Source of the DNA: Zootoca vivipara
Lineage: Eukaryota
Length of the DNA stretch: 64,000 bases
Reading direction: 5' to 3'
NCBI RefSeq assembly: GCF_963506605.1
Contig: NC_083277.1
Coordinates: 24,552,001 to 24,616,000 of the forward strand
Numbering within the stretch: the first letter of the stretch is position 1; each line of letters starts with the position of its first letter. Under the pieces are notes generated by a model. That model ran no database searches. It saw only the letters and a program-made list of their open reading frames with translations, and had not been told where the DNA came from. A program made the translations under genes and the position numbers. Positions 1,489 through 45,736 of this stretch are shown in pieces.

Positions 1489-1724
1489 CAGGGGTCAGCA
1501 AACTTTTCCACTGTCCCTCAGACCTTGTGGGGGGCCGGACTATATTTTTTTGGGGAAAGAAAGAACGAATTCCTATGCCCCACAAATAACCCAGAGATGC
1601 ATTTTAAATAAAAGGACACATTCTACTCATGTAAAAACACGCTGATTCCCGGACCGTCCGCGGGCCAGATTTAGAAGGTGATTGGGCCAGATTTGGCCCC
1701 CGGGCCTTAGTTTGCCTACCCATG
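1489..1724. mobile_element. hAT (Charlie-type) MITE
   Basis: Imperfect TIRs CAGGGGTCAGCAAACT / AGTTTGCCTACCCATG; degenerate TSD gtgtaga/ctgtaga. Confidence 0.8.
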
Positions 1725-1825
1725 CTGTAGAACTTATAAATTAAAGGCTTTTGCGGATGATGTGGCCCTAACAATGTAATGTAAACCCTAATGTAGAACA
1801 ACCTAATGTAAGCATTCCCAAGGTT

Positions 1826-9859: not shown

Positions 9860-9964
9860 ATATGCCAATATTTGGCCTATGCCCAGCTCATGATGATTTC
9901 TATTTGGTGATGTGTAACCACTGTAATCAGGTCGTAAAACCACAGGCATTTCAATCACATTATG
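9860..9964 (+). CDS. ATXN7: Ataxin-7 coding exon (N-terminal Zn-finger region, [35 protein letters not shown])
   Basis: ttttag|AT...TATG|gtaagt; 105 bp, phase 1-1; peptide recognisable as ataxin-7 Zn finger (CxxC...H). Confidence 0.97.
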
Positions 9965-11264: not shown

Positions 11265-11301
11265 TATCTGAAGAAGTGTGCATGCACATGAAAGCTCATA
11301 C
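11265..11301 (+). ncRNA. Minimal type-I hammerhead ribozyme motif in a Penelope-like fragment (fragment ~11265-11350)
   Basis: tat-CTGAAGA-A-GTGTGC/AT/GCACAT-GAAA-GC-TC-atac: intact core, 6-bp stem II, palindromic AGCU stem III, 3-bp stem I. Confidence 0.6.
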
Positions 11302-11512
11302 CAGAACAAACTTAGTTGGTCTATAAGGTGCTACTGGACAATTTTTTATTTTTTTATTTTTATTGTAAATATATAATTAGTATTACTTTAAGGCTGGTTT
11401 CAGTAAAGTATTTAAAAATACAATCCAGAAATATTGCCATCTGTAAATGTATAATGGCATTTCAATTTTTTAATAGACATTCACTAATTAAAATAAAGTA
11501 CCAGTATGAGTA

Positions 11513-11870
11513 GGGACCCAGGTGGCGCTGTGGTTAAACCACTGAGCCTAGGGCTTGCTGAACAGAAGGTCGGCGGTTCGAATCCCTGTGACGGGGTGAG
11601 CTCCCGTTGCTTGGTCCCAGCTCCTGCCAACCTAGCAGTTCGAAAGCATGTCAAAGTGCAAGTAGATAAATAGGAACCGCTACAGCGGGAAGGTAAACGG
11701 CGTTTCCGTGTGCTGCTCTGGTTTGCCAGAATCGGCTTTGTCATGCTGACCACATGACCTGGAAGCTATACGCCGGCTCCCTCGGCCAATAATGCGAGAT
11801 GAGCGCACAACCCCAGAGTCGGTCACGACTGGACCTAATGGTCAGGGGTCCCTTTACCTTTACCTTTACC
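11513..11870 (+). mobile_element. Sauria SINE, full length
   Basis: GGTGGCGCTGTGG A-box, GGTTCGAATCC B-box, (ACCTTT)n tail; flanking direct repeat taccagtatgagtaggga at 11499-11516 / 11867-11884. Confidence 0.95.
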
Positions 11871-12812: not shown

Positions 12813-13155
12813 TGTTGTTGTTGTTTAGTCGTTTAGTCGTGTCCGACTCTTCGTGACCCCATGGACCAGAGCACGCCAGGCACTCCTGTCTTGCACTGCC
12901 TCCCGCAGTTTGGTCAAACTCATGTTCGTAGCTTCGAGAACACTGTCCAACCATCTTGTCCTCTGTCGTCCCCTTCTCCTAGTGCCCTCAATCTTTCCCA
13001 ACATCAGGGTCTTTTCCAAGGATTCTTCTCTTCTCATGAGGTGGCCAAAGTATTGGAGCCTCAGCTTCACGATCTGTCCTTCCAGGGAGCACTCAGGGCT
13101 GATTTCCTTAAGAATGGATAGGTTTGATCTTCTTGCAGTCCATGGGACTCTCAAG
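12813..13155 (-). mobile_element. BovB (RTE clade) LINE, 5'-truncated
   Basis: ORF MRVPWTARRSN...YFGHLMRR...LMLGKIEG.RRRGRQR.RWLD; (CAA)n tail; 12-bp TSD agtattgttgat at 12801-12 / 13156-67. Confidence 0.95.
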
Positions 13156-16100: not shown

Positions 16101-16454
16101 GACCCAGGTGGCGCTGTGGTTAAACCACTGAGCCTAGGGCTTGCTGATCAGAAGGTCGGCGGTTCAAATCCCTGTGACGGGGTGAGCTCCCGTTGCTTGG
16201 TCCCAGCTCCTGCCAACCTAGCAGTTCGAAAGCACGTCAAAATGCAAGTAGATAAATAGGAACCGCTACAGCGGGAAGGTAAACGGCGTTTCCATGTGCT
16301 GCTCTGGTTCGCCAGAAGCGGCTTTGTCATGCTGGCCACATGACCTGGAAGGTATACGCCGGCTCCCTCGGCCAATAATGCGAGATGAGCGCCGCAACCC
16401 CAGAGTCGGTCACGACTGGACCTAATGGTCAGGGGTCCCTTTACCTTTACCTTT
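16101..16454 (+). mobile_element. Sauria SINE, near full length
   Basis: Near-identical to the 11513 copy; TSD taagaataga at 16093-16102 / 16455-64. Confidence 0.95.
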
Positions 16455-17568: not shown

Positions 17569-17867
17569 GACGCAGGTGACTCTGTGGGTTAAACCACAGA
17601 GCCTAGGGCTTGCTGATCAGAAGGTCGGCGGTTCGAATCCCTGCGACGGGGTGAACTCCTGTTGCTCAGTCCCAGCTCCTGCCAACCTAGCAGTTCGAAA
17701 GCACGTCAAAGTGCAAGTAGATAAATAGGTACCGCTCCAAGAAGCGGCTTTGTCATGCTGGCCACATGACCTGGAAGCTGTACGCGGCCAATAAAGCGAG
17801 ATGAGCGCCGCAACCCCAGAGTCAGTCACGACTGGACCTAATGGTCAGGGGTCACTTTGCCTTTACC
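17569..17867 (+). mobile_element. Sauria SINE with internal deletion
   Basis: 16-bp TSD tatatatcctctgaag at 17553-68 / 17868-83; lacks the ~45-nt GCGGGAAGGTAAACGGCG segment. Confidence 0.93.
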
Positions 17868-19576
17868 TATATATCCTCTGAAGACCATATATAGAACCTT
17901 CTTACCAGCTCCTGAAACTCATGGATCCAGCATCCCCCTTTCTTCTGAACCCTTCTTGCCCTTTGTCTCCCAGATCCTTCTTTCAGTAGCTAACCATCTT
18001 CTGATGGAGTTCTGTGATGTTTCGCATCTGTGCATGTTGTTGTTCTATTCCCCTAGATCCTACCTGGCTGCTGCTTTTCATTCTCCTGTTTTGAGACTCA
18101 GGCTATCCACCTTTATTAGCCATGTTAGGTTTTGGCACTGCAATAGTCCTGTCAACTGTAAAGAATTAGAGATCATCATATAATCATTATATGATTATAA
18201 TGTTTTATTTGCTTCTCCCCCACCACACACACAATTTGATTGCATCATATGCTGTATTGCTGGCAGCATAATATATAGGCATGCACCTATGGAACTATGA
18301 GAAGGCGTCATTAGGGTGTTACGTTTCTGGCACTCCTTACAGTTTATGGTTTGCTTGATTTCTAGCTGCCAAAGCTAAGAGGCGCAAAAACATACTACTG
18401 TTATTTCGCAATCTGCCTTGATTTACATAAATTGATTGTATGTATCTTAGAAGTCCTATTCTTAGGGGAAGGAAGAATACTTAAAATATGCAATATACAT
18501 ATTTACATTCTGATGTGCTTTTTAAGCATCTGATACTGTGTTGTTATAAGGGAGAGGAGCAAGGAATCCATTTCAGTTTCAACAAAATTACTCATTTTGT
18601 TTGCACTAAACCCAAATCCTTGAGTTTTTAAATAAACTTGTTTCATCTGGCTGCCTTTCAACAGAGCTGCATTCCTAATGTTGGCAATGGCATGAAAACC
18701 AAAGGTTAAAGTCTTCATCTTTGAATAAGAATTGCAAAATAAAGCTCATAATATCAATTGGATTTCTGCATTAGTGGTTAAACTGTTTCCTTTGATTTTT
18801 GCCTCAGAAATGAGACTTACATGCCTTGAGTTTTAATCTCTCAAGTGTGAGCAGTTTGTGCTAGGCAGCAGCTAAGGGCAGACAGGTGGGTTCATAGAGA
18901 TCCAGGCAATATTATGATATCAGCCCAGCTGGGATTGAAGCCCAGTGAGTCAGGCAGCAGAGTGCATAGAAAAAACTCAAACCTAATCCAGACTACAGCT
19001 CCAAACAAAGGTAGATACTGTGCAGAGGAGCGAGAAATCAAGCGACCCAAGGTGAAATTGTACCTATGCAGTGTCATCGCACCCAATCCCATTCTCTCAC
19101 AGACAGGCATCAAGGAATGGCACTGGCTTTTTGCCCACGATGCGCTGGTTCCAAGTTGCAACCAAAACATGTGGGCTTTCGTATGTGAGCATTTGTTGTG
19201 CTCTGGTGTCTGATATATTTCCAGTTGTTGTGTATTTATTTCCATATCTAATAATGTAGCAAGACTGGGCAGAGGACCCATCAGAATCTACTTGTAGATC
19301 TGAGTGTAAATGGCAAGCATTCCTGACTCCCAACTGTTTAATCATGGCAGCAACAAAATGACTCTGCCACCGCCCTGTCCTAAATTATACTCCACAAATG
19401 AAGAAAGGTTCGAGTAGCCAGGAATTATTTTTTGTTTGGAAGAACTGTGAACTCAGTTCAGTTCTGCTATTTACAGGATTCTGAGTCCAGGAATTTGTTT
19501 TATTCCTAATTATGCGCCAGACTATACTGGAATTATCTTTGGCATAGAACTGAGCAGTTAGATATATCTCAAAGGA

Positions 19577-25146: not shown

Positions 25147-26341
25147 TATTTATCATGTTTGTTTTACTTGTATTTAGTAAACAATGCTATAAACTTTGAC
25201 ACTGCCAAACTTGCCTGATATTGTATTTGCAAATGGCACCCACTAATGTTCTTATGAAACGGAAACACTTCTGTGGAAAAATGACGGCTTAGAAAAAATT
25301 TCCTTTGTCAATGTGATTAGGTGCTAAATCATGATTCTGGAATTAAAATGTTTCCATGGCTTTGTCCGGATTTAGCACCAAGAAAAGTTAGATGCCACCC
25401 TTTTTATAAGTTTTTAAATTTATTTGATACCATTGCTGATAACCAATATCAAGCCCTCCCTTGCAACTGTGGTGAATAAGGAATAGCTGTTGTTCATTTT
25501 TTGCTAGCTAGGTTGTGACATTTGCACCTACTTGTTTTTTCAGCCTATCATCTTTCTTAAGATGCATCTTGGCTATGATGCCTCAAATGGTTGAGGTCAT
25601 TGTTCAGCGCACAGCCCCATTACAAATCGTGAGCTGCACACTGGTAGTTAAATCCTATTGAAGTTTCTTTTCTAAAGCAAACTTGAAACTATAAGGTTTT
25701 TTTGGAAAATGCCTGAAATAAATTTGGATCTTATTTAGCAAATATAAAACACCATACAGCAAAAGAGCTTAATTCCAAAGTGAGGGAGAATTTTTTTCAG
25801 GTAAAATCCAAGTGTGGATAATTATTTATGAACTAATTCTGTGTTAACAACTGGTTGTCTAGATTATTTTTGCAGCTCAGAGTTACGTATGCAGGAAAGG
25901 AACATGCATTCATTCATGTACACAGCAAAGCTCTGATAAAGTATATACTGTATTAAGTGGCTGCGGGGGTTAGAATTTAGTATTCAGAATATTAAGTAAT
26001 TTTATAGAATAGTTCTGAAGCACGCTAGCTCTGCAAAGTTCTATTAAATACTCCTTTTGGAAAGCTGTAGTGTTGCATGAGTGTCCATCATGCAGTTCAT
26101 ATTGTACCAGGATTTGTTATTGCATGTTGAATGATAGCTGTTGTAAAGGGAACTGGGGCAGTAGCTGATTAGCACATTATATGGTAGATTGTTTTAAGTA
26201 TGGGCCTCTCAAACTCTGCCAGGTTGTCTGAAAACAGAGGGATTAATTTACATCAGCAAGGATTCCTGGTGTGACCATGTTACCGTAGATAAAATTAGAC
26301 TCCTCCTCCCTGTTTTCACTAGTTATCTGCCAGGACCTTTG

Positions 26342-26384
26342 TGACTCAAGCGCACTTCACTGTAACAGCAAACTGTTACATAAA
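26342..26384 (+). promoter_or_regulatory. Putative internal ATXN7 promoter elements: AP-1 TGACTCA (26342-48), D-box TTACATAA (26376-83) overlapping CATAAA
   Basis: Motifs 100-140 nt upstream of the alternative ATG in a TE-poor stretch; function inferred. Confidence 0.4.
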
Positions 26385-26481
26385 CCCAAACATGGAGCCT
26401 ATCTGGAGTTTGTGGGCAGACCCAAATTATGATGCAAGCTTCAGTGGCAAGTGTGCAGTGAAGCACGGTCAAATTATGTGA

Positions 26482-26551
26482 ATGGGGGGAGTGAAACAAG
26501 AAGGCTTTCCAGAACAGCCTGTTTCCTTTAGACAGGGCTTGAAAGCTCTGG
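26482..26551 (+). CDS. ATXN7: Putative alternative first coding exon of ATXN7 (MGGVKQEGFPEQPVSFRQGLKAL + G)
   Basis: ATG 26482, 23 open codons, G|gtaact donor in phase 1 matching the 35112 acceptor (G+AA=Glu, ERRH). End resembles the recalled human short-isoform N-terminus (..QELKAPL-ERRH). Confidence 0.7.
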
Positions 26552-27989
26552 GTAACTTTCTGGTGCAGTTTTCAGAGGCAGGAGTTGGCAGGGATCCCAG
26601 ATCTGAATGGAGTTTGCAGAAGGTTGGTATAGTTCTGTACTAACACGACATGAAACGGAGAGACTTACACTTGTGTGCATTTTTGTAAGTTTGTTTTCTC
26701 TCGCTCGCTCTTGCTCTGCCAGAGGTGGAGCTGAATAGTGTTGAAGTCCCGTAGATGGCCTTTGCAGAGTTAGTTGATCAAAGTGGATAATCTCAAAATG
26801 AGGGATTAACTGCTGCAAGCGGCCCACATAAGCCATTCTGAAATGTGATTTGGCCAAAGTTCAAACGCAGATGGGAGTTGAGTTTGCTATTAACTCAGAC
26901 AAAATGCTGATGTTTGCATGGAGCTATCACAGTATTTTGGAACATAGTAGCTCTTTTTAAACTGTATCGCAAAGACGTGTAATTGTTTACAAAGCTGACT
27001 GATGTCTAAGATTAACATTTCTGCGTGCTTAAAACGCTTAAACTGTTATTTTGTTAATCATATTTATGATTAAAGTGCTTCTGTGATCAAAATAAGTTCC
27101 CTGAACAGAATGTGATCTGTGTTAAAGCGGCTTCTCTGCAGAAGTTTAAAATGCACATTTTTGTAAAAGAAAAAACATTTGACAAGGGTTAGCAACAACA
27201 AAAGATACAAAGAAAGTTGTATCTGGTAATTTCAGCCTTCTGGATGTAAGTGCTGCGTTTGTTTTGTTTGATTTATTAATAAGAACTAGCTTAATAAGCT
27301 AATTTTAGAAGCTAATCACCGGAAAAGCATATTTAACTCCCCTTCATAGCCCAATTGAGCAACGTAAATTTACATGTCAGAGTGCTATAAACACAAAACT
27401 TATGTTTACAACAGAAGATGGTAATAGTTTTGTCATTGTAAATTTCTTGAAGCTGAAATGTGAAAAGAAATTGGTGACCATCTTACCGTGCAAACATAAT
27501 GTGGTTTGCCCTTATTGTTTACTCTGAATAATCACTCAATTTTATCAGTGACAAAGCATGAAGCTGCTTGTATGCTAGAATTTCTGTTGTAATCCTTCTA
27601 CGCAGCACATAGTAATTATACTGCAAGAGTCTAGAATATTTTGCCAACATAACTACATTAAAGTTAATTGAATGACCAAGTGTCTCTTATTCTTAATCAA
27701 ATGTGCTGCTGCTATTGCAAAGAGGTTTTTTTTATTAAAAAAATCCTCACATCAACAAAGCAGTTTGTTTCTACCCAGTTATGTTTTGTCTAATAGCCTG
27801 TTACACCTGCTTCAACCCCTTTGGTGCCACAAAAAGGTACTCTGCAACATTCTGTTTCTTGGCATATTTTATAATTTCAATTGACCCTAAAGTTATCAGA
27901 ATATAAATTTGGGAATTCAAAAAACCTGTAAGACAGGGAAAATAAGTAAAGATAACACAACTGTGTCCTTCTCCCATACATACGTACAT

Positions 27990-28042: not shown

Positions 28043-29301
28043 CCAGCAAAATAGCATCCCATTGAGCTAAATCCACCTCTGGTCTTTGAATATAGGAAAC
28101 ACTGTAGGGTTTCAGTAGGTTGTTCATTCAGAAAATGTGCCTTCTTTGCCATAGTTCTGGTTCACATGTAACAGTAAGCCACACCATGGTTTTGCGCAAA
28201 AGAAAGAGAAAAACCCCCATGTGGGATTCTGTACCAAAGGTTGCAGCCACAGTGCTTCTCCTCAGTTCTTGTTACTGCTGTACTATACAGGACAAAACCA
28301 TGGATTAGTGTAGTACTGTATAATGTCCAAAGCCAGGTCTTGCTCAAGACAAAAGATAAGCAGTAACCAAGGTCAAATTGAGATCTTTTATTTTTTATCC
28401 ATCTGTTTTCAATAACTGTCTAGAAACCTTTTCAGATCTTAATGTTTGTCAAGGCATTGACAGATGTTAAATATATTTGTTTTAAAGAAGAACAGTGGGA
28501 TCTGTTTTTATTGAATTACAAAAGCTGGGATAAAAATTTGTTGGGAAACTACGTACAAAGTGTAAATAGTTCATTAATTCATATATTAAATATTATGCTG
28601 CCTGTATTATGATGACAGAAAATTTCCACAACATGTTAGAAAGCCACATGGCGTATTTGTTAAACTGATGCAGAACAGTGAAAAGGTTTTGTGACGTATT
28701 TACAACGTTCCTTGGCTTCCTGTTCTTCTGGTAGCTGCTGCTGACAGCTTCCACTTAAGACTACTGCCTGCCACTCAGTCTTCTGTTTTTGAACTACTGT
28801 TGCGCTTTCCATAGCCATTGGACTTAATGTTTCTATCTAGTGTCTGATTTATCATACAGATTATTTCAGCTGTTGTGTTTTGTACTAGCGGTAGAACAAC
28901 AAAACTAAAGGAAGTTCTTGGCTGTTGCATTGTCCCAGAAAGGGATCAATAAAATTTATCTGCTCCATCTACTACAGGAACTGCTGAAGATGATTCCTGT
29001 TCAGAGTTCATCCGTGATAGTGGAGCAGATGTGTAGGGTTCAAAGAGATGGGACGTGCGATATGAGCTGTTCTTGTCACATACATCATGCTTTAATGTAC
29101 AATTGTATGGGGTTTGAGGTGTAATGCCATGATTTTATGTCCTGAGAAGGGATAGTTGATCTCATGTGGGTTCTTAAGGCTGGGGAGTGGGGGCACTGCC
29201 AGTGAAATGTAAGAGTAATTCTCCTGCAAAGTATCAGCTTAATACTGGATAAGCAGCAGATTCTGTCTTTCAGATCTCCTCTTTAATTACCACCAGATAA
29301 G

Positions 29302-29381
29302 AAAATTCCTTCAGTAGCACCTTAAAGACCAACTAAGTTTTAATTTTGGTATGAGCTTTCGTGTGCATGCACACTTCATCA
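29302..29381 (-). mobile_element. Penelope-like pLTR fragment (hammerhead truncated at the 5' core)
   Basis: Reverse complement of tgatgaagtgtgcatgcacacgaaagctcatacc...aaggtgctactgaagg. Confidence 0.75.
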
Positions 29382-29585: not shown

Positions 29586-29663
29586 AAATAAAAAAAATCC
29601 TTCAGTAGCACCTTAAAGACTAACTAAGTTTTTATTTTGGTATGAGCTTTCGTGTGCATGCAC
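29586..29663 (-). mobile_element. Penelope-like pLTR fragment
   Basis: Same family as 29302-29381, truncated inside stem II. Confidence 0.75.
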
Positions 29664-32600
29664 AATTAACAAACACTGCCTAAGTAGCCTAGCGAAAAAT
29701 GCAGTTAATGATATTTCTGTCAATCAAAACTATACATTGCAAATTAATGAGTTTATATATGTGTGTGTTACAATGTAACTCCCCTGTCATTTTAAAATGA
29801 TGTAAAATAGAAGATACAGTACTGGTAACTTGCCAATATATGGATCAGATACTATTTTTAACATTGACTTGTATTGGGATTTAAGATTTGCTAAGTGTAC
29901 AGTAGCTAAGAAGGTAGAAATATCCAGCCTTTTCTTTTTTTCTTTTTGCTTGTACGGGTTCAGTATCACTAATATTGGCTCTAGCAAAATCCTACACTGC
30001 TGAACTTTTAAGGCCTCCAAATAGTAAGTTAGCAAATCCACTCTGGGAATCTCGCCATTGTTATAAAAAGACACTTGGCACTTAGTACTTTGTCCTATTT
30101 AGAAGCACACAATTTACTAGGCTATAAAATGCAAATATACTTGCACAGCACGTAGTTTTGTAAATAGACTAAATGGCCTGTTTTGGGATATGGGGGAAGA
30201 TTACTAAGAGGAAAACTAGAAGTGAATCAATGCAGAGATTTATTTGCTCCCAGACGTCTGGGATCCCCTCACTTTTTATTTAGAACTCAGAATTACAACA
30301 GAAGCACATGGCTCATTTTTAAGTTTAAATGTGTAGTTTTGACACCTCGGAGAGCCCTACCTTATTTTGATGATTGGCTGGGAGGGTCTGGTTGATTTAG
30401 AGGTGTTAGAGAAAGGGATGAATTAGCTTGAATGCTAATCCTAACAATTAGGAATAAACTTGAATTAGGATTCTTTGTGCCTCTGACTAACTGGTGTTGG
30501 TGTTTTCACCCCATCCATGATTGATCATGTGATCGATCAAATTATCCAGGGATTATGTTGTTCTTGGGGTGGAGTGGCAATCCTAGGATTTAGAGTTCGC
30601 ATTTAGTGCACCACTGACTACCACAGTGAAATTTGGTCATAAATCAAGCAAGAACATCAAACTTGTATATGAACATATTCCGATTGTAGTTCTTTTTGTT
30701 GCTATTTGTGCAATTACTACCACAGACCCTGAAATAGCAATCATGCTTTGAGATAATTTATGGTTTGGCCACAAATGTGTACACAGATGAACATGAATTA
30801 TTAAATTTACACATGCACACAAAAAGGCTGCTGAAATTCCAGATGAGTAGATCCTTAATACTGGCTTTGCGGTTTCCCCCGTCTGTTCTCTATGCAGCGC
30901 TGCCTTTTCAGGAAGTGATTTATCTATATTGAGATAGGTAATGACCTCCTCCCCAAGTATTATTTAATGTCTTGATGGTACAAACATGGGGTATTCCTTT
31001 ATTATTTATAAAAATGAAAGTACACATTTAGATGTCTGGTTTTCATTCCTATCCCTGAGGTGTGAAAGCTGACCAAAATTAGATGACCTGTGACCTCATG
31101 CAAGGCTGTAGACTTTAATTTAAGAAAAGAAAGCAGGTGTTTATAAACTATCAGTAAATCTTGAGAACCTCACAGAGGAGACATACTGATAGGGCTACCA
31201 ATTGCAGAGTCTTCATTTATGTGTGGTATAAAAATAGCTATGCAAATTTTTGGTTGAAAAAAAATCTACAGTAAGGTTAATCTGAAGGGGCTATTTCAGG
31301 CCTTTTCTTACTTCGTATGAAGAGTCAGTGAGGTTTATGCAGAACTATTCCAGAGTTTTCCTGATACCACTGTTTTTCTTCTGATTCCTTATGAGACCTC
31401 GGGGGGGGGGGGGGCATAGATCCATAAGCCAGTAACAACTTGATTAATGAATAATGCCACTGTCTCCTATGTGATGAATTGGTGGGTAGACACACTGGAA
31501 AGAGGAAGACATGTGTCTCTTCTCAGATTTTGTGTGTGTTTGAATGAACAGTTCTGCAGTAGGAATGTATACTTGGCAGGTTTACCTATACAACCTTATT
31601 GCTTACTAGCAACTTCTTTCATAACAGGTTTAAAGCAGGTCGGATATTTGTCAAACCCAAAGGTTAAAAAACACACAAAACAGTTTCTCTAGCTGTGCCC
31701 AGAATAGAACACTCTAGTTGCACAGTTCTTGGATCCCAAACCTTCAGTTCCAGAGAAACATTAAAGGTGCTCACAGATCTGCTTCTGCACCAGAGAGCAA
31801 GGAAATTGGAAGTTAAGGCACTCGACCTCAACATCTGTGCCATCTACCGTAAATATGTTCTTCAGTGTCTTTTACCCAGCCAGTTTACACCTTAGCCTCC
31901 GGGCACTCACAGTTTCCCTTCACCTTTCTGCCCTAAATCATTTCTCTCTTCATATTCAGTGTATGTATTGGATGGGCAAAGAATTGAATGGAATGTAGTT
32001 CAAAGAAAGGTTTTAAAACTGCTGTGATTCAGCTACTCTTTATATCCTTCACAAGGCAGATTTTCAAGCCAAATTTCTTACTGATATAATTTGTCTTGAT
32101 TTTATGATGAATAGCATTTTCAGGCTTTAAAATGATAGAAAGGTTAAAAAGGAACTCGCCTTAACTATACAGCCATTCCAGCAGCCCTTATAATCAAGGT
32201 TAAACATATTCAAAATTCTGTATAATCATTTTGGGGATTTGTGTTGAGCTTCCGGTGTTGGTTTCTTGTCAGAGTTCTGCCATAACTGGTCTGGTCAGGT
32301 TATGAACAGGGAAAGGGGAGGGGAACAGTATTGCTCAGAGAATCACTGCCGTGCCTAAATAGAGGACTGTGTGTATTCTGGATGCAAGAGTTAGGTAATG
32401 GAGGAAATAGTCCCTGCCAAGTTTGTGCTTCTTTTTTTTTCAGTCATAGGAAATACTAGACTAGCAAAAAATAAATAAAAAATACCTAGCTAATCTGCAA
32501 GGAAGCTTGGTTTTGTAGCCCTTCCAGATAGTGCAATAGTAATATGCTTTTGCAGTCATGTTGCTAGATCTCATTTAATATTACACTTTTTAAAAGTAAC

Positions 32601-33370: not shown

Positions 33371-33860
33371 CAGTGGTACCTCTACTTACGAATGTTTCTA
33401 CTTACGAACGGAGCTCCGTCCGTCATCTTGGATGCTGTTTAGATAGGGTTTTTTCTACTTACGAATTTTTAGATAGGGTTGGTTACAGGTAGGTAGCCGT
33501 GTTGGTCTGGATCGAAGTAAAATAAAAAAATTCCTTCAGTAGCACCTTAAAGACCAACTAAGTTTTTATTTTGGTATGAGCTTTCGTGTGCATGCACACT
33601 TCTTCAGATCTGAAGAAGATACGAAGATCTTCTTCGTATCTGAAGAAGTGTGCATGCACACAAAAGCTCATACCAAAATAAAAACTTAGTTGGTCTTTAA
33701 GGTGCTACTGAAGGAATTTTTTTATTTTACTTAGATAGGGTTGCTTCGACTTACGATTTTTTTTCTCCCAATGCATTCCTATGGGATTCGACTTACAATT
33801 TTTTTCGACTTACGAATGTGCGTTTGGAACACATTAAATTTGTAAGTAGAGGTACCACTG
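33371..33860. mobile_element. Tc1/mariner (Tigger-like) MITE, host of a Penelope insertion
   Basis: TA TSD; TIR CAGTGGTACCTCTACTTAC / GTAAGTAGAGGTACCACTG. Confidence 0.92.
33482..33732. mobile_element. Penelope-like inverted pLTR pair
   Basis: 95-bp arms 33515-33609 / 33638-33732 with one mismatch; flanking duplication ttagatagggttg at 33469-81 / 33731-43. Confidence 0.85.
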
Positions 33861-35111: not shown

Positions 35112-35367
35112 AAAGAAGACACAGCTCCTCCAGCAAGCCACCTTTAACCCCTCCTTCCTCTTCAGTATTCTCCCTCTTTTCGCCTCTGACTTCAAAAAGC
35201 AAAGGTAGCAGCGGAGGTGGGAGCAGTCGTTCATCCAGTGGCGGAGGTACTAGTGCATCGTCATCATCCAGTTCCAAGTTGTTGAAGTCACCCAAAGACA
35301 AGCCGCCAATCAGTGGAAACAATAGGCCAATGCACCTGGTACATAGCAAAGGTCCCCATGACAAAAT
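35112..35367 (+). CDS. ATXN7: Ataxin-7 coding exon (ERRHSSSSKPP...KLLKSPK...GPHDKI)
   Basis: cttccag|AAAG...AAAAT|gtgagt; 256 bp; frame continuous with neighbouring exons. Confidence 0.96.
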
Positions 35368-38419: not shown

Positions 38420-39559
38420 ATCTAAATGCTAACTCTCAGTTGTTCCAAAGCACCGTGTGTGGTGTACTTGCACATGTATTACTCTGCTTCCCTTTTTCTG
38501 GTGTTTCCCCTCCCTTCTTGGACCTTTTGGTTCAGCACTATTTCAGATCCTGCTGGTCAGAAAAATCAGCCGCATATGCACGCCCAGCCTTCCTTGGATC
38601 CCAGCCAACATTATTAAATGTGCCTTAAATCATCATAATGTGGCATGAGCTAGAAGTGCACAAAACGAAATACGCAAGTGCTGATTAATAGTGCAAATGT
38701 TCACTATTTCCTTTAAAGTGTCCCTCATTTGAAGTATAATATATATTTTTTAATCCTCCTAGGTGAATTAAGTGGTATGAAATCATTTCCCTGGTGCAAG
38801 AAATAGCCCTAGATAAAGGCCAAGAACCGACACAGTCCACACAGCTATATAGTTTTCAACTTGGAAGCTTTGATAGCAAATGAGGCAAGCCTTGAACAGT
38901 GTGTTGACTCTTGGACAGGGGATCGGAATAAAAGCACTTACCGGATGGGGGGGTTGCACATATAGATCTCTTGGGTCTTAGCTGCTGTGACCATTTATGG
39001 ACCCACAGTTACAAAATTTTCCTAGGCATAAGCATGTACAGTTAAAGAAGAGCGCTGTTATTTTTAAAATAAAAAATAAATACACCTGCTCCTTAATCTC
39101 TTCAGTTTGTGTGTTTTTGAAATCTTAATATATGAATTTAAGAAGGTTTTCCTCCCGTTTTCTTAACTATAGCATCATATATAGATTTCTATATAAATGT
39201 AAGAGAGATGTGGCTTCCACTTGACTTACAATGTATAGTATATGTCAGTAACACTGAACTGTTAGAATATGACAGTATGATTCATTTTTCTAGTTTTACT
39301 TTAATTTATATTTCTTTACAAAGCATGCTCATTGAGTCTGTGTGGTTTCTTTCTCACGGATTCTAAAAAGAAGAGGGGCGTAGGTGTAAAGAAAAATACA
39401 AGTGTGGCGATACCTTTACTTGCTTTCACATCGTAAACTCAAAAGCAACTTTGGGGGTTAGTTCTGCATTGAAATAAACAAATTCAATTTCTGAACGAAG
39501 CAAAAATTGTTATTGTTGTTTGTGTTATTATTATTTGTATTATTATTTGTATTTAACAG

Positions 39560-39642
39560 AGAGAGAATTTGATCCTGATATCTACTGTGGCGTCATTGAC
39601 ATAGAAACGAAGAAACCCTGTACTAGGTCTTTGACATGCAAG
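39560..39642 (+). CDS. ATXN7: Ataxin-7 coding exon, SCA7 domain start (EREFDPDIYCGVIDIETKKPCTRSLTCK)
   Basis: aacag|AG...CAAG|gtagga; 83 bp; SCA7 Zn-binding Cys pattern. Confidence 0.98.
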
Positions 39643-41120: not shown

Positions 41121-41386
41121 ACACATTCCCTAACTCAACGGAGAGCTGTACAGGGTCGAAGGAAACGATTTGATTTATTACTAGCTGAGCACAAAAGCAA
41201 AACCAGGGAAAAAGAATTACTCCGCCATTTGGATCATCATCAGCAGATGCCCCCTCTCAGGGAACCACATCCCTCACCTTCAAGAACTTCCCAGGAGCTG
41301 CACCAAAATTCTCATGGAGTTATTCCTACAGAATCAAAGCCTTTAGTACCTACTAAACCCAAACCTCACACCCCCAGTCTTCCAAG
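41121..41386 (+). CDS. ATXN7: Ataxin-7 coding exon (THSLTQRRAVQGRRKRFD...PHTPSLPR)
   Basis: ttccag|ACA...CCAAG|gtaaat; 266 bp. Confidence 0.97.
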
Positions 41387-44356: not shown

Positions 44357-45561
44357 CCGTGTTTCTCCTATTTTAAGACGTATTCATAAAATAAGCCGTA
44401 GCAGGATTTTAAAGCATTTGCGAAATATACAACATACCCCCAAAAATAAGCCATACCCATGAGCTGCACGGAGCGAGACCGCCAAGCACCCCAGCCAGCC
44501 AGCGGGACCAAGCACGACGGCCGCGGCAGGAGGAGGCCTGCCGGGTCGGTGCCCAGTAGTGCCGCGCGGAGTGCCCCAAGCTTCCTGCCCTGTTGCTGCT
44601 GCTGGCTCCCGGAGGCTTGGGGAGCTCTGCGTGGCGCTGCTGGGCGCCGACCCAGTAGTCTGCCTCCGGGAGCCAGCAGCAGCAACAAGTCCGAGGATCT
44701 CGCTGGCTTCCTCCATCCCCTTGATTTCTGGGTTGATGAGTTGGTTTGGAGAGGCGGACGGCAGAAAGAGTGAGTGTGTGTGTGTGTGAGAGGGAGAGAG
44801 AGAGAGAGAGGAGAAAACAAGCCCTCCCTTGCTGGTCAGGGGCGGGAGAAAGGTCCCAGATTCTCTAGGTTCCCCTTCCTCCCTCTCCGAGTTTAATGGG
44901 TGTTTGGCTGTGGCGACGGCATCCCCAGTCTGCCGATGTGAACAAGAGGGGAAGAGCGAGAGCTGTGGAATGCCATCCTGCAATGTTGAAATTGCCATTG
45001 TAATTTCCGCTCCCTGCTCTGTTGCCTCGCTCGCTTTCCACCTCCGCGAACCCCCCGCCCCGTCCTTCTTTCTTCCTCCCCCTCCCCTTTTCAGTGATCC
45101 TCTTTTCCTCTCTGCCCTCCCCCCATGCACTCCGGTGTCTGATTAAATGAGAAGGAAGTTTGGGAGTGGAGGCTGCAAAGCTCTCCCTTTAAGAGGCAGC
45201 CTGCAATGACGAATTGTTGAAATTGCCATTGCAGGCTGCCTCTTAAAGGGAGAGCTTCACTCCCACACTTCCTTCTCATTTAATCAGACACCGGAGCACG
45301 GGTGAGCGAGCCAACGGAGCAGGGAGTTTTTTGTTCAAGTGGGGCGGGAAGGAAACCCACCTGATCACTTCTTGGAGTGGTTTAAAGCCACAGCGTCCCC
45401 TGGTAAAAGGCTGAGATTTCTTCACCATCCCTGTTTACTTGCTACAGCCTTTCTCCTTCTTCCCCCAGTGTATTTTAAGACACCCCTTGAAAATAAGCCA
45501 TATGCTTATTTTCTTGAGTAAAATAAATACAAGACGGTGTCTTAAAATAGGAGAAACACGG
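44357..45561. mobile_element. Non-autonomous Tc1/mariner (Tc2-like TIR) element, 1205 bp, with CpG-rich cargo
   Basis: TA TSD; perfect 23-bp TIR CCGTGTTTCTCCTATTTTAAGAC; subterminal AAAATAAGCC repeats. Confidence 0.9.
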
Positions 45562-45736
45562 TATCTAATTCTGATGGTCATTTGTGTAGGGCTGCTTACA
45601 GCATAGGCCTTTGACTCTGTGCCCACTGTACATTTTCAGTCTTCCTTCCGTTAAGGTAGCAGATTTTTTAATTTCAAGTGGGCAAGATAGAATTAACCCA
45701 TGGAACATTAATGACCTGCTTTTCCCTGCCGCCTAG

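What the first reader, a model, noticed from the sequence alone, without database searches (positions are those of the whole stretch)
26482..26557. Hidden alternative first coding exon predicts a polyQ-less, ZnF-less ataxin-7 isoform
Seen: in the middle of the 25-kb intron (9965-35111), ATG 26482 opens MGGVKQEGFPEQPVSFRQGLKAL and ends G|gtaact. That is exactly the phase needed to join the 35112 exon (ERRHSSS), giving 2220 nt = 739 aa. It is too short for the ORF track. Recalled, to be verified: a human short ATXN7 isoform starts MEGSK...QELKAPL-ERRH from an internal first exon in the same intron, and QGLKAL resembles QELKAPL. Inference: an amniote-conserved internal promoter produces ataxin-7 that keeps the SCA7 domain and C-terminal region but lacks the Zn finger needed to anchor the USP22 DUB module, so it could uncouple SAGA from H2B deubiquitination.
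Basis: partly seen in the sequence, partly recalled or inferred. Interest (0 to 1): 0.8.

Follow-up and report, generated by a model that had tools for sequence, protein, structure and literature searches.

The report
Known alternative ATXN7 exon, different splice use

Summary
ATG 26482 opens 23 codons plus one G, followed by GT at 26552, in the phase that exon 35112 (ERRHSSS) needs.

The pattern alone is not special: 23 comparable ATG/donor combinations lie in the same intron.

The place, however, is the orthologue of an alternative ATXN7 exon already annotated from coelacanth to apes. A turtle model (Macrochelys) uses the same near donor. Crocodilians and another turtle read through it to a far donor after MEFAE.

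Seven squamate RefSeq models start at MEFAE-ERRH. In the window that is ATG 26607 with donor GT at 26623.

Against the turtle peptide, the lizard DNA is 37/45 identical. That match needs three frameshifts, and a TGA replaces a Cys. A close relative's contig (low depth) lacks one G, which would close it (MGE*).

RNA reads gave no test: 0 reads and no positive control.

Verdict: the exon is real and ZnF-less ataxin-7 is plausible. The exact 739-aa model is unproven. The feature is already known and its function is unstudied.

The parts
9860..9964 (+). Constitutive ATXN7 exon encoding the N-terminal Zn finger ([34 protein letters not shown]). It ends in phase 1 with G|GTAAGT. The short isoform lacks it.
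   Evidence: identical peptide in squamate ATXN7 proteins; donor score 10.6
26300..26322 (+). Pyrimidine tract (18 of 20) ending in TAG. This is the only acceptor-like site upstream, and an exon would start at 26323. It allows the exon to be internal (cassette) rather than first. Untested.
26482..26551 (+). The interior (about 26494-26522) is read in a different frame from the turtle peptide.
26552..26553 (+). Near (proximal) donor GT, TGG|GTAACT, score 4.7. It is homologous to the donor of mammalian models and of the Macrochelys model. In crocodilians and Pangshura the same bases are read through as Gly-Asn (GLKAL-GNF).
26604..26606 (+). TGA where turtles, crocodilians, coelacanth and frog have Cys (..QICMEFAE). 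It cuts the long ancestral ORF just before the MEFAE start.
26607..26622 (+). ATG GAG TTT GCA GAA + G, which is MEFAE in phase 1. This is the start annotated in the seven squamate short isoforms seen (Anolis reads MKFAE), and also in a caecilian. It forms the C-terminal end of the longer N-termini in coelacanth, frog, turtle and crocodilians.
26623..26624 (+). Far (distal) donor GT, AAG|GTTGGT, score 6.0. It joins MEFAE+G to AA of exon 35112.
35112..35367 (+). Constitutive exon (E)RRHSSSSKPPL...PHDK, acceptor AG at 35110-11. It is the common junction partner of all N-terminal variants.
39559..39642 (+). First half of the SCA7 zinc-binding domain (PF08313, profile positions 12-38). The short isoform keeps it.
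   Evidence: E 1.3e-10
41121..41207 (+). Second half of the SCA7 domain (PF08313, profile positions 39-67).
   Evidence: E 1.4e-08

Best explanation
Window 26482-26622 is the lizard orthologue of an ancient alternative exon of ATXN7. The exon lies in the intron between the Zn-finger exon and the ERRHSSS exon. It has two alternative donors, and its products skip the polyQ and Zn-finger exons. In squamates the coding use that annotation supports is ATG 26607 (MEFAE) with the far donor at 26623, which gives a protein of about 721 aa that starts MEFAE-ERRHSSS and keeps the SCA7 domain. It would read 47 codons in the exon and 11 more in exon 35112 (KEDTAPPASHL, stop), overlapping the MEFAE start. 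It is possible here but not shown. Shown: exon orthology, both donors, both ATGs, the frames, and the annotation pattern across taxa. Inferred: that the exon is transcribed in this species, which donor is used, and that the product enters SAGA without holding the deubiquitinase module.
For: (1) Short isoforms starting MEFAE-ERRH occur in Podarcis muralis, Sceloporus, Varanus, Pogona, Rhineura and Hemicordylus, with MKFAE in Anolis. They also occur in the caecilian Geotrypetes. Coelacanth and Discoglossus end their N-termini ..Q[IL]CMEFAE-ERRH. (2) Crocodilians and the turtle Pangshura carry both motifs in one 45-aa frame, M[GE]VNKK..GLKALGNF..AQICMEFAE-ERRH. (3) These peptides match the window best at exactly this exon. 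Crocodilian residues 16-45 hit 26532-26621 with E 7e-9, and coelacanth hits with E 5.5e-4. (4) In the frameshift-aware alignment, Pangshura is 37/45 identical over 26482-26621, with three frameshifts and a TGA at 26604-06. That explains why squamate models begin at MEFAE. (5) The far donor scores 6.0 and the near donor 4.7. (6) The relative's contig keeps MEFAE and the far donor unchanged but has one G fewer in the run at 26484, which would give MGE-stop for the upstream ORF. (7) The SCA7 domain is present downstream. (8) The ataxin-7 amino terminus and its zinc finger hold the deubiquitinase (Non-stop/USP22) in SAGA (PMC6693919, PMC8987156).
Against: There is no transcript evidence in this species. 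Three RNA runs of the same species label, each read to about 6%, gave 0 reads on 25600-27400, and no positive control shows the runs would have caught ATXN7. The squamate models are computational predictions and I could not inspect their support. If the transcript starts upstream of 26482, the MEFAE start lies behind ATGs at 26476 and 26482 (and more at 26392-26432), which would hamper its use. In this genome the upstream ORF is open and in phase with the near donor, so that product cannot be excluded. The 1-base deletion in the relative rests on one contig of depth 2.4 in a homopolymer run.
Confidence: 0.6

Rival explanations
1. One reading: in this lizard the exon is spliced at the near donor (26551|26552) and translated from ATG 26482. 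The product is a 739-aa ataxin-7 with the 23-aa N-terminus MGGVK..QGLKAL, alone or alongside the MEFAE form.
For: The ORF is open and in the right phase. The ATG and the GT are homologous to those used in mammalian models (Pongo, Tupaia, Ochotona, Erinaceus, Tamandua) and in the turtle Macrochelys model. With the far donor this ATG would be an inhibitory overlapping upstream start, so use of the near donor would make sense of it being in phase.
Against: None of the seven squamate models seen uses it. Nine or so interior codons are frame-shifted relative to turtles, so the peptide is not under protein-level constraint. The relative's contig would close the ORF after three codons (weak). The near donor is the weaker of the two (4.7 against 6.0). 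The -3 position of the ATG is T, and a one-codon ATG-TGA sits directly upstream.
Confidence: 0.2
2. The exon is mainly regulatory and makes no stable protein in squamates. It could be a cassette ('poison') exon entered from the Zn-finger exon through the acceptor-like site at 26322/26323, which would bring stop codons into the full-length frame. Or it could be a non-coding first exon whose upstream ATGs keep translation low.
For: The acceptor-like site has 18 of 20 pyrimidines followed by TAG. The frame entering from the ZnF exon meets stops (three-frame translation). There are five ATGs before MEFAE. Nucleotide conservation persists through frameshifts and stops, which fits constraint on RNA or DNA rather than on the peptide. 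No CpG island is present.
Against: MEFAE with a phase-1 donor is kept from coelacanth to squamates, which is hard to explain without coding use. Turtles and crocodilians keep a 45-codon open frame. Annotation pipelines call a protein of more than 700 aa from these transcripts.
Confidence: 0.15
3. Chance ORF in an intron: no exon lies here at all.
For: There are 23 comparable ATG/phase-1 GT combinations in the same intron, and 0 RNA reads.
Against: Significant and exactly placed matches to annotated N-termini from five vertebrate classes.
Confidence: 0.02

Closest known systems
Mammalian short ATXN7 isoforms (Pongo abelii X7/X8 XP_054407911/XP_054407912; Tupaia X2, Ochotona X7/X2, Erinaceus X2, Tamandua X5). 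The human RefSeq transcript NM_001128149 is recalled from memory as the same kind. Two papers list that accession with ATXN7, but I did not read its sequence.
   Same: The alternative exon has a 21-22-aa N-terminus M-E-G-x-K...Q-[GE]-L-K-A-x-L joined directly to ERRHSSS. The start ATG and donor are homologous to 26482 and 26552. The products lack polyQ and the Zn finger and keep the SCA7 domain.
   Different: The interior of the lizard ORF is frame-shifted, so only the ends match. Only 10 of 21 (Pongo, no frameshift) to 13 of 22 (Erinaceus, one frameshift) residues are identical. Use of this donor in squamates is not annotated.
Squamate short ATXN7 isoforms (Podarcis muralis X2 XP_077781191, Sceloporus X2, Varanus X3, Pogona X4, Rhineura X2, Hemicordylus X5, Anolis X2)
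   Same: They belong to the same clade as the window, whose exons are 87-93% identical in protein. Their start MEFAE-ERRH is encoded in the window at 26607-26622 with a phase-1 GT donor.
   Different: They are 714-729 aa long rather than 739.
Turtle and crocodilian short isoforms (Pangshura 4-T5, Macrochelys 3-T4; Alligator, Crocodylus, Gavialis X3)
   Same: Same exon. Pangshura and the crocodilians use the far donor. Pangshura is 37/45 and Macrochelys 19/21 identical to the window DNA when frameshifts are allowed.
   Different: In them one uninterrupted frame runs from the first ATG to MEFAE. The lizard has three frameshifts and a TGA.
N-terminal truncation or loss of Sgf73/Atxn7 in yeast and fly (functional analogue, from the literature)
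   Same: Removing the amino-terminal zinc-finger region detaches the deubiquitinase module from SAGA (PMC6693919, citing Lee et al. 2009; PMC8987156).
   Different: Those are experimental mutants. Nothing shows that the natural short vertebrate isoform enters SAGA or has this effect.

Membership tests
ATXN7 (ataxin-7) gene | SCA7 zinc-binding domain (Pfam PF08313) | tested here: met
   the two exon pieces 39559-39642 and 41121-41384 match profile positions 12-38 and 39-67 (41.4 and 34.9 bits; cutoff 23).
ATXN7 (ataxin-7) gene | Orthology to annotated ataxin-7 along the coding exons | tested here: met
   tblastn finds 84-93% identity to squamate ataxin-7 over about 770-810 residues, with exons in order on the + strand.
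ATXN7 (ataxin-7) gene | N-terminal Sgf73-type Zn finger exon | tested here: met
   9862-9963 encodes [34 protein letters not shown], identical to other squamates. Pfam has no passing model for it.
Vertebrate short ATXN7 isoform from the alternative exon before ERRHSSS | Exon sequence orthologous to the annotated alternative exon | tested here: met
   the best window-wide matches of crocodilian, turtle and coelacanth N-termini fall at 26482-26621 (E 7e-9; 37/45 identical).
Vertebrate short ATXN7 isoform from the alternative exon before ERRHSSS | Far-donor form: MEFAE start followed by a phase-1 GT | tested here: met
   ATG 26607, G 26622, GT 26623; the same start in seven squamates.
Vertebrate short ATXN7 isoform from the alternative exon before ERRHSSS | Near-donor form: first ATG, open frame, and a phase-1 GT after GLKA(x)L | tested here: met
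   all three are present in this genome.
Vertebrate short ATXN7 isoform from the alternative exon before ERRHSSS | Near-donor form: same reading frame as in other species throughout (peptide conserved) | tested here: not met
   two compensating frameshifts (about 26494 and 26522) are needed to follow the turtle peptide; the relative's contig would give MGE-stop.
Vertebrate short ATXN7 isoform from the alternative exon before ERRHSSS | Transcribed and spliced to exon 35112 in this species | tested here: inconclusive
   0 reads in three RNA runs, each sampled at about 6%, with no positive control.
Vertebrate short ATXN7 isoform from the alternative exon before ERRHSSS | First exon with its own promoter | not testable with these tools
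   No CAGE or 5' end data were available. No CpG island is present. An acceptor-like site at 26322/26323 leaves an internal exon possible.

The most novel reading that the evidence does not exclude
A polyQ-less, Zn-finger-less ataxin-7 has been kept for over 400 million years (coelacanth to mammals) as a natural competitor that occupies the ATXN7 slot in SAGA without holding the USP22 module. Lineages would tune it by switching between two donors of one exon. In this lizard the choice of donor decides whether ATG 26482 is the protein start or an inhibitory upstream start for MEFAE.
Probability: 0.15. Interest if true: 0.6.

Novelty: already known. Interest (0 to 1): 0.3.

Why it matters
The exon and the truncated isoform are already in public annotation for apes, other mammals, turtles, crocodilians, squamates, amphibians and coelacanth, so the window adds no new kind of feature.

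What may be worth a specialist's attention is that the isoform seems unstudied. A 2022 SCA7 review does not use the word isoform, and four literature searches found nothing on it. Yet the exon is kept across sarcopterygians.

If the product enters SAGA without the Zn finger, it would yield SAGA without its deubiquitinase. In SCA7 it would be a polyQ-free competitor of the mutant protein.

For the scan itself, the lesson is that an open, in-phase mini-ORF at an orthologous exon can still be the wrong coding model. Here the conserved start and donor lie 125 and 71 bases further on.

Tried and rejected
(1) RNA reads. The fourth run (a close relative) gave two unspliced, DNA-like contigs.

(2) HMMER search with the ERRH exon. 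It returned mostly fragments whose 'N-termini' are read-through of the upstream intron, for example ..FSLPERRH. P0004's N-terminus looked similar by eye (EGFGEQQ / QGLSEKQ), but tblastn gave no match at the exon, so I rejected it.

No DNA of other vertebrates could be fetched, and the planned test of ATG, frame and donor conservation across squamate genomes could not be run.

(4) Third protein search, with the crocodilian N-terminus. It added no new representatives, because isoforms are hidden inside 90% clusters. Cluster listings were what revealed them.

(5) Birds. No isoform with this exon appeared among the members listed. That is not evidence of absence, because only 40 of 403 and 40 of 158 members were read.

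(6) Literature. No paper on this isoform was found. NM_001128149 appears only in variant and expression tables.

(7) Joined model. Exons were searched one by one, and the 739-aa total was not re-derived.

(8) I did not scan metagenome contigs for the exon, because human-derived contigs could have come back.

Full report
**Setting**

The window carries ATXN7 on the + strand. Its exons match squamate ataxin-7 proteins at 84-93% identity. The SCA7 domain (PF08313) is split over exons at 39559-39642 and 41121 onward. PSMD6-like ORFs lie on the minus strand near 57-61 kb. Lacertids and Elgaria are the nearest annotated species, at about 90%. None is identical, so the species itself is not among the proteins I saw.

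**The observation**

- ATG lies at 26482-84, directly after an in-frame TGA.
- It opens 23 codons, MGGVKQEGFPEQPVSFRQGLKAL, followed by G 26551 and GT 26552.
- Exon 35112 begins with AA, so the junction gives Glu and then RRHSSS.
- The Zn-finger exon ends at 9964 in the same phase.

As a bare pattern it is not remarkable.
- The same 25-kb intron holds 23 ATG-ORFs of at least 20 codons that end at a phase-1 GT of equal or better donor score.
- This donor is weak: 4.7, against 8.2-10.6 for the gene's constitutive donors.
- The -3 position of the ATG is T, and a one-codon ATG-TGA sits just upstream.
- The stretch is not part of any repeat found within the intron, and there is no CpG island.

**Transcript evidence**

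One run search and one read-laying run were allowed. Three RNA-seq runs with the same species label, each sampled to about 6% (7.5 million reads), put no read on 25600-27400. Without a positive control this is no test.

A fourth run, from a close relative (98-99% identical), gave two short contigs. One runs unspliced across both donors (26424-26684), so it is DNA-like. It differs by G>T at 26521, by G>A at 26584, and by one G fewer in the run at 26484. The contig depth is only 2.4 and the site is a homopolymer, so this counts as a hint only. MEFAE and the far donor (see below) are unchanged in that contig.

**What other species show**

A search with the ERRH exon mostly found fragments that read through the upstream intron. 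One look-alike N-terminus (P0004) did not stand up to tblastn.

Searching with full-length bird and monitor-lizard proteins restricted to the ERRH region, and then listing cluster members, brought out the annotated short isoforms.

| Group | N-terminus joined to ERRH | Species or models |
|---|---|---|
| Mammals | MEGNK.PLQ..AQGLKAPL | Tupaia, Tamandua, two Ochotona, Erinaceus |
| Orangutan | MEGSKTPLQSSPSAQELKAPL | Pongo abelii X7/X8 |
| Turtle, near donor | MGVNKKAFQNSLSFCTGLKAL | Macrochelys |
| Turtle, far donor | MGVNKKAFQNSLSLCTGLKALGNFSCAVFRGRSWQRAQICMEFAE | Pangshura |
| Crocodilians | nearly the same 45 residues as Pangshura | three species |
| Squamates | MEFAE (MKFAE in Anolis) | Podarcis muralis, Sceloporus, Varanus, Pogona, Rhineura, Hemicordylus, Anolis |
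| Caecilian | MEFAE | Geotrypetes |
| Coelacanth, frog | ..AQICMEFAE and ..AQLCMEFAE | Latimeria, Discoglossus |

Taken together, this is one exon with two donors. The near donor lies after GLKA(x)L and the far donor after MEFAE.

**Mapping onto the window**

The three forward frames of 26400-26700 each hold a piece of the ancestral peptide:
- NKKAFQNSL lies in a second frame.
- AVFRGRSWQGSQI-stop-MEFAE lies in the third.

The crocodilian N-terminus hits 26532-26621 with E 7e-9 and the coelacanth one hits with E 5.5e-4. Both are the best matches in the whole window.

A frameshift-aware alignment gives 37/45 identities to Pangshura over 26482-26621. It needs three frameshifts (near 26494, 26522 and 26560), and a TGA at 26604-06 stands where the other species have Cys. 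Macrochelys is 19/21 identical with the first two shifts.

MEFAE is ATG 26607-09 through GAA 26619-21, then G 26622 and GT 26623 (AAG|GTTGGT, score 6.0). It is in phase 1, exactly as the squamate models require.

**Consequences**

The exon is real and orthologous. Its conservation reaches beyond amniotes.

In squamates the long frame has decayed and the annotated coding use is MEFAE with the far donor. On such a transcript ATG 26482 would open an out-of-frame upstream ORF of 58 codons. It spans 141 bases to 26622 and then reads KEDTAPPASHL-stop in exon 35112, the same tail as the ORF ending at 35147. This upstream ORF overlaps the MEFAE start.

Which of the two happens here is open.

The regulatory reading rests on three points:
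- There is an acceptor-like site (pyrimidine tract plus TAG; the exon would start at 26323).
- Five ATGs lie ahead of MEFAE.
- Nucleotide conservation persists through the frameshifts.

**Function**

The short products lack the polyQ tract and the amino-terminal Zn finger and keep the SCA7 domain (on Podarcis X2 and on the window's exons). [quoted passage not shown] A Zn-finger-less isoform that still enters SAGA would therefore give a complex without the deubiquitinase. This step is inference, and I found no paper on the isoform.

**Limits**

- The cross-species evidence therefore consists of computational gene models, whose transcript support I could not inspect.

**Verdict**

Observation confirmed. 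Interpretation partly supported. The feature is already known from annotation. Interest is modest.

Noticed in passing
window 26137-26354 and 26424-26684: Small runs (60-370 million letters) of three other organisms from four studies hold parts of this stretch. The one that was laid gave 224- and 260-base contigs at 98-99% identity, one ending in adapter letters. This looks like reduced-representation or capture data and may mean the exon region is a conserved marker locus.
   Followed up: partly
window 26484-26489: A run of six G right after the ATG.
   Followed up: partly
window 26289-26322: A TATA-like ATAAAAT lies at 26289-26295, followed by a pyrimidine tract and TAG (26300-26322). This could be a core promoter or a 3' splice site for the alternative exon. 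The relative's contig lacks 5 bases at 26281.
   Followed up: no
window 44400-45400: A GC-rich block (GC 0.55-0.62, CpG observed/expected up to 0.74) with long ORFs on both strands, in the intron just before the large ATXN7 exon at 45735. Unexplained; possibly a CpG-island-like element.
   Followed up: no
window 11515-11865, 16101-16452, 17570-17868: Three copies of a repeat of about 300-350 bases (97% identity between two of them) that ends ..GGTCAGGGGTCCCTTTACCTTTACCT. From memory it resembles a squamate SINE.
   Followed up: no
window 33511-33736; related copies at 29297-29381, 29588-29672, 11265-11354: A near-perfect palindrome (110-base arms, 96% complementary, 6 bases apart) with dispersed single-arm copies. 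MITE-like.
   Followed up: no
window 1685-1726: The odd N-terminus of a Varanus model (KAF7250031, MGTAGRIRPPGRSLRTHAQ-ERRH) finds its best window match here (E 0.003), upstream of the Zn-finger exon. It may be a repeat-derived or spurious first exon in that annotation.
   Followed up: no
related proteins P0190 and P0193 (Hemicordylus capensis): Two further alternative N-termini join to ERRH in one lizard: MGLAT- and MQQQQQRRRRRRRQP-. So the junction before the ERRH exon takes several upstream partners.
   Followed up: no
window 56782-61007, minus strand: ORFs with proteasome subunit PSMD6-like peptides (for example ..[26 protein letters not shown]) lie tail to tail with ATXN7. From memory, the two genes are also neighbours in human.
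   Followed up: no
window 12825-13154, minus strand: A 109-aa ORF resembling the C-terminal tail of a LINE reverse transcriptase (..RSAWRALVHGVTKSRTRLND).
   Followed up: no
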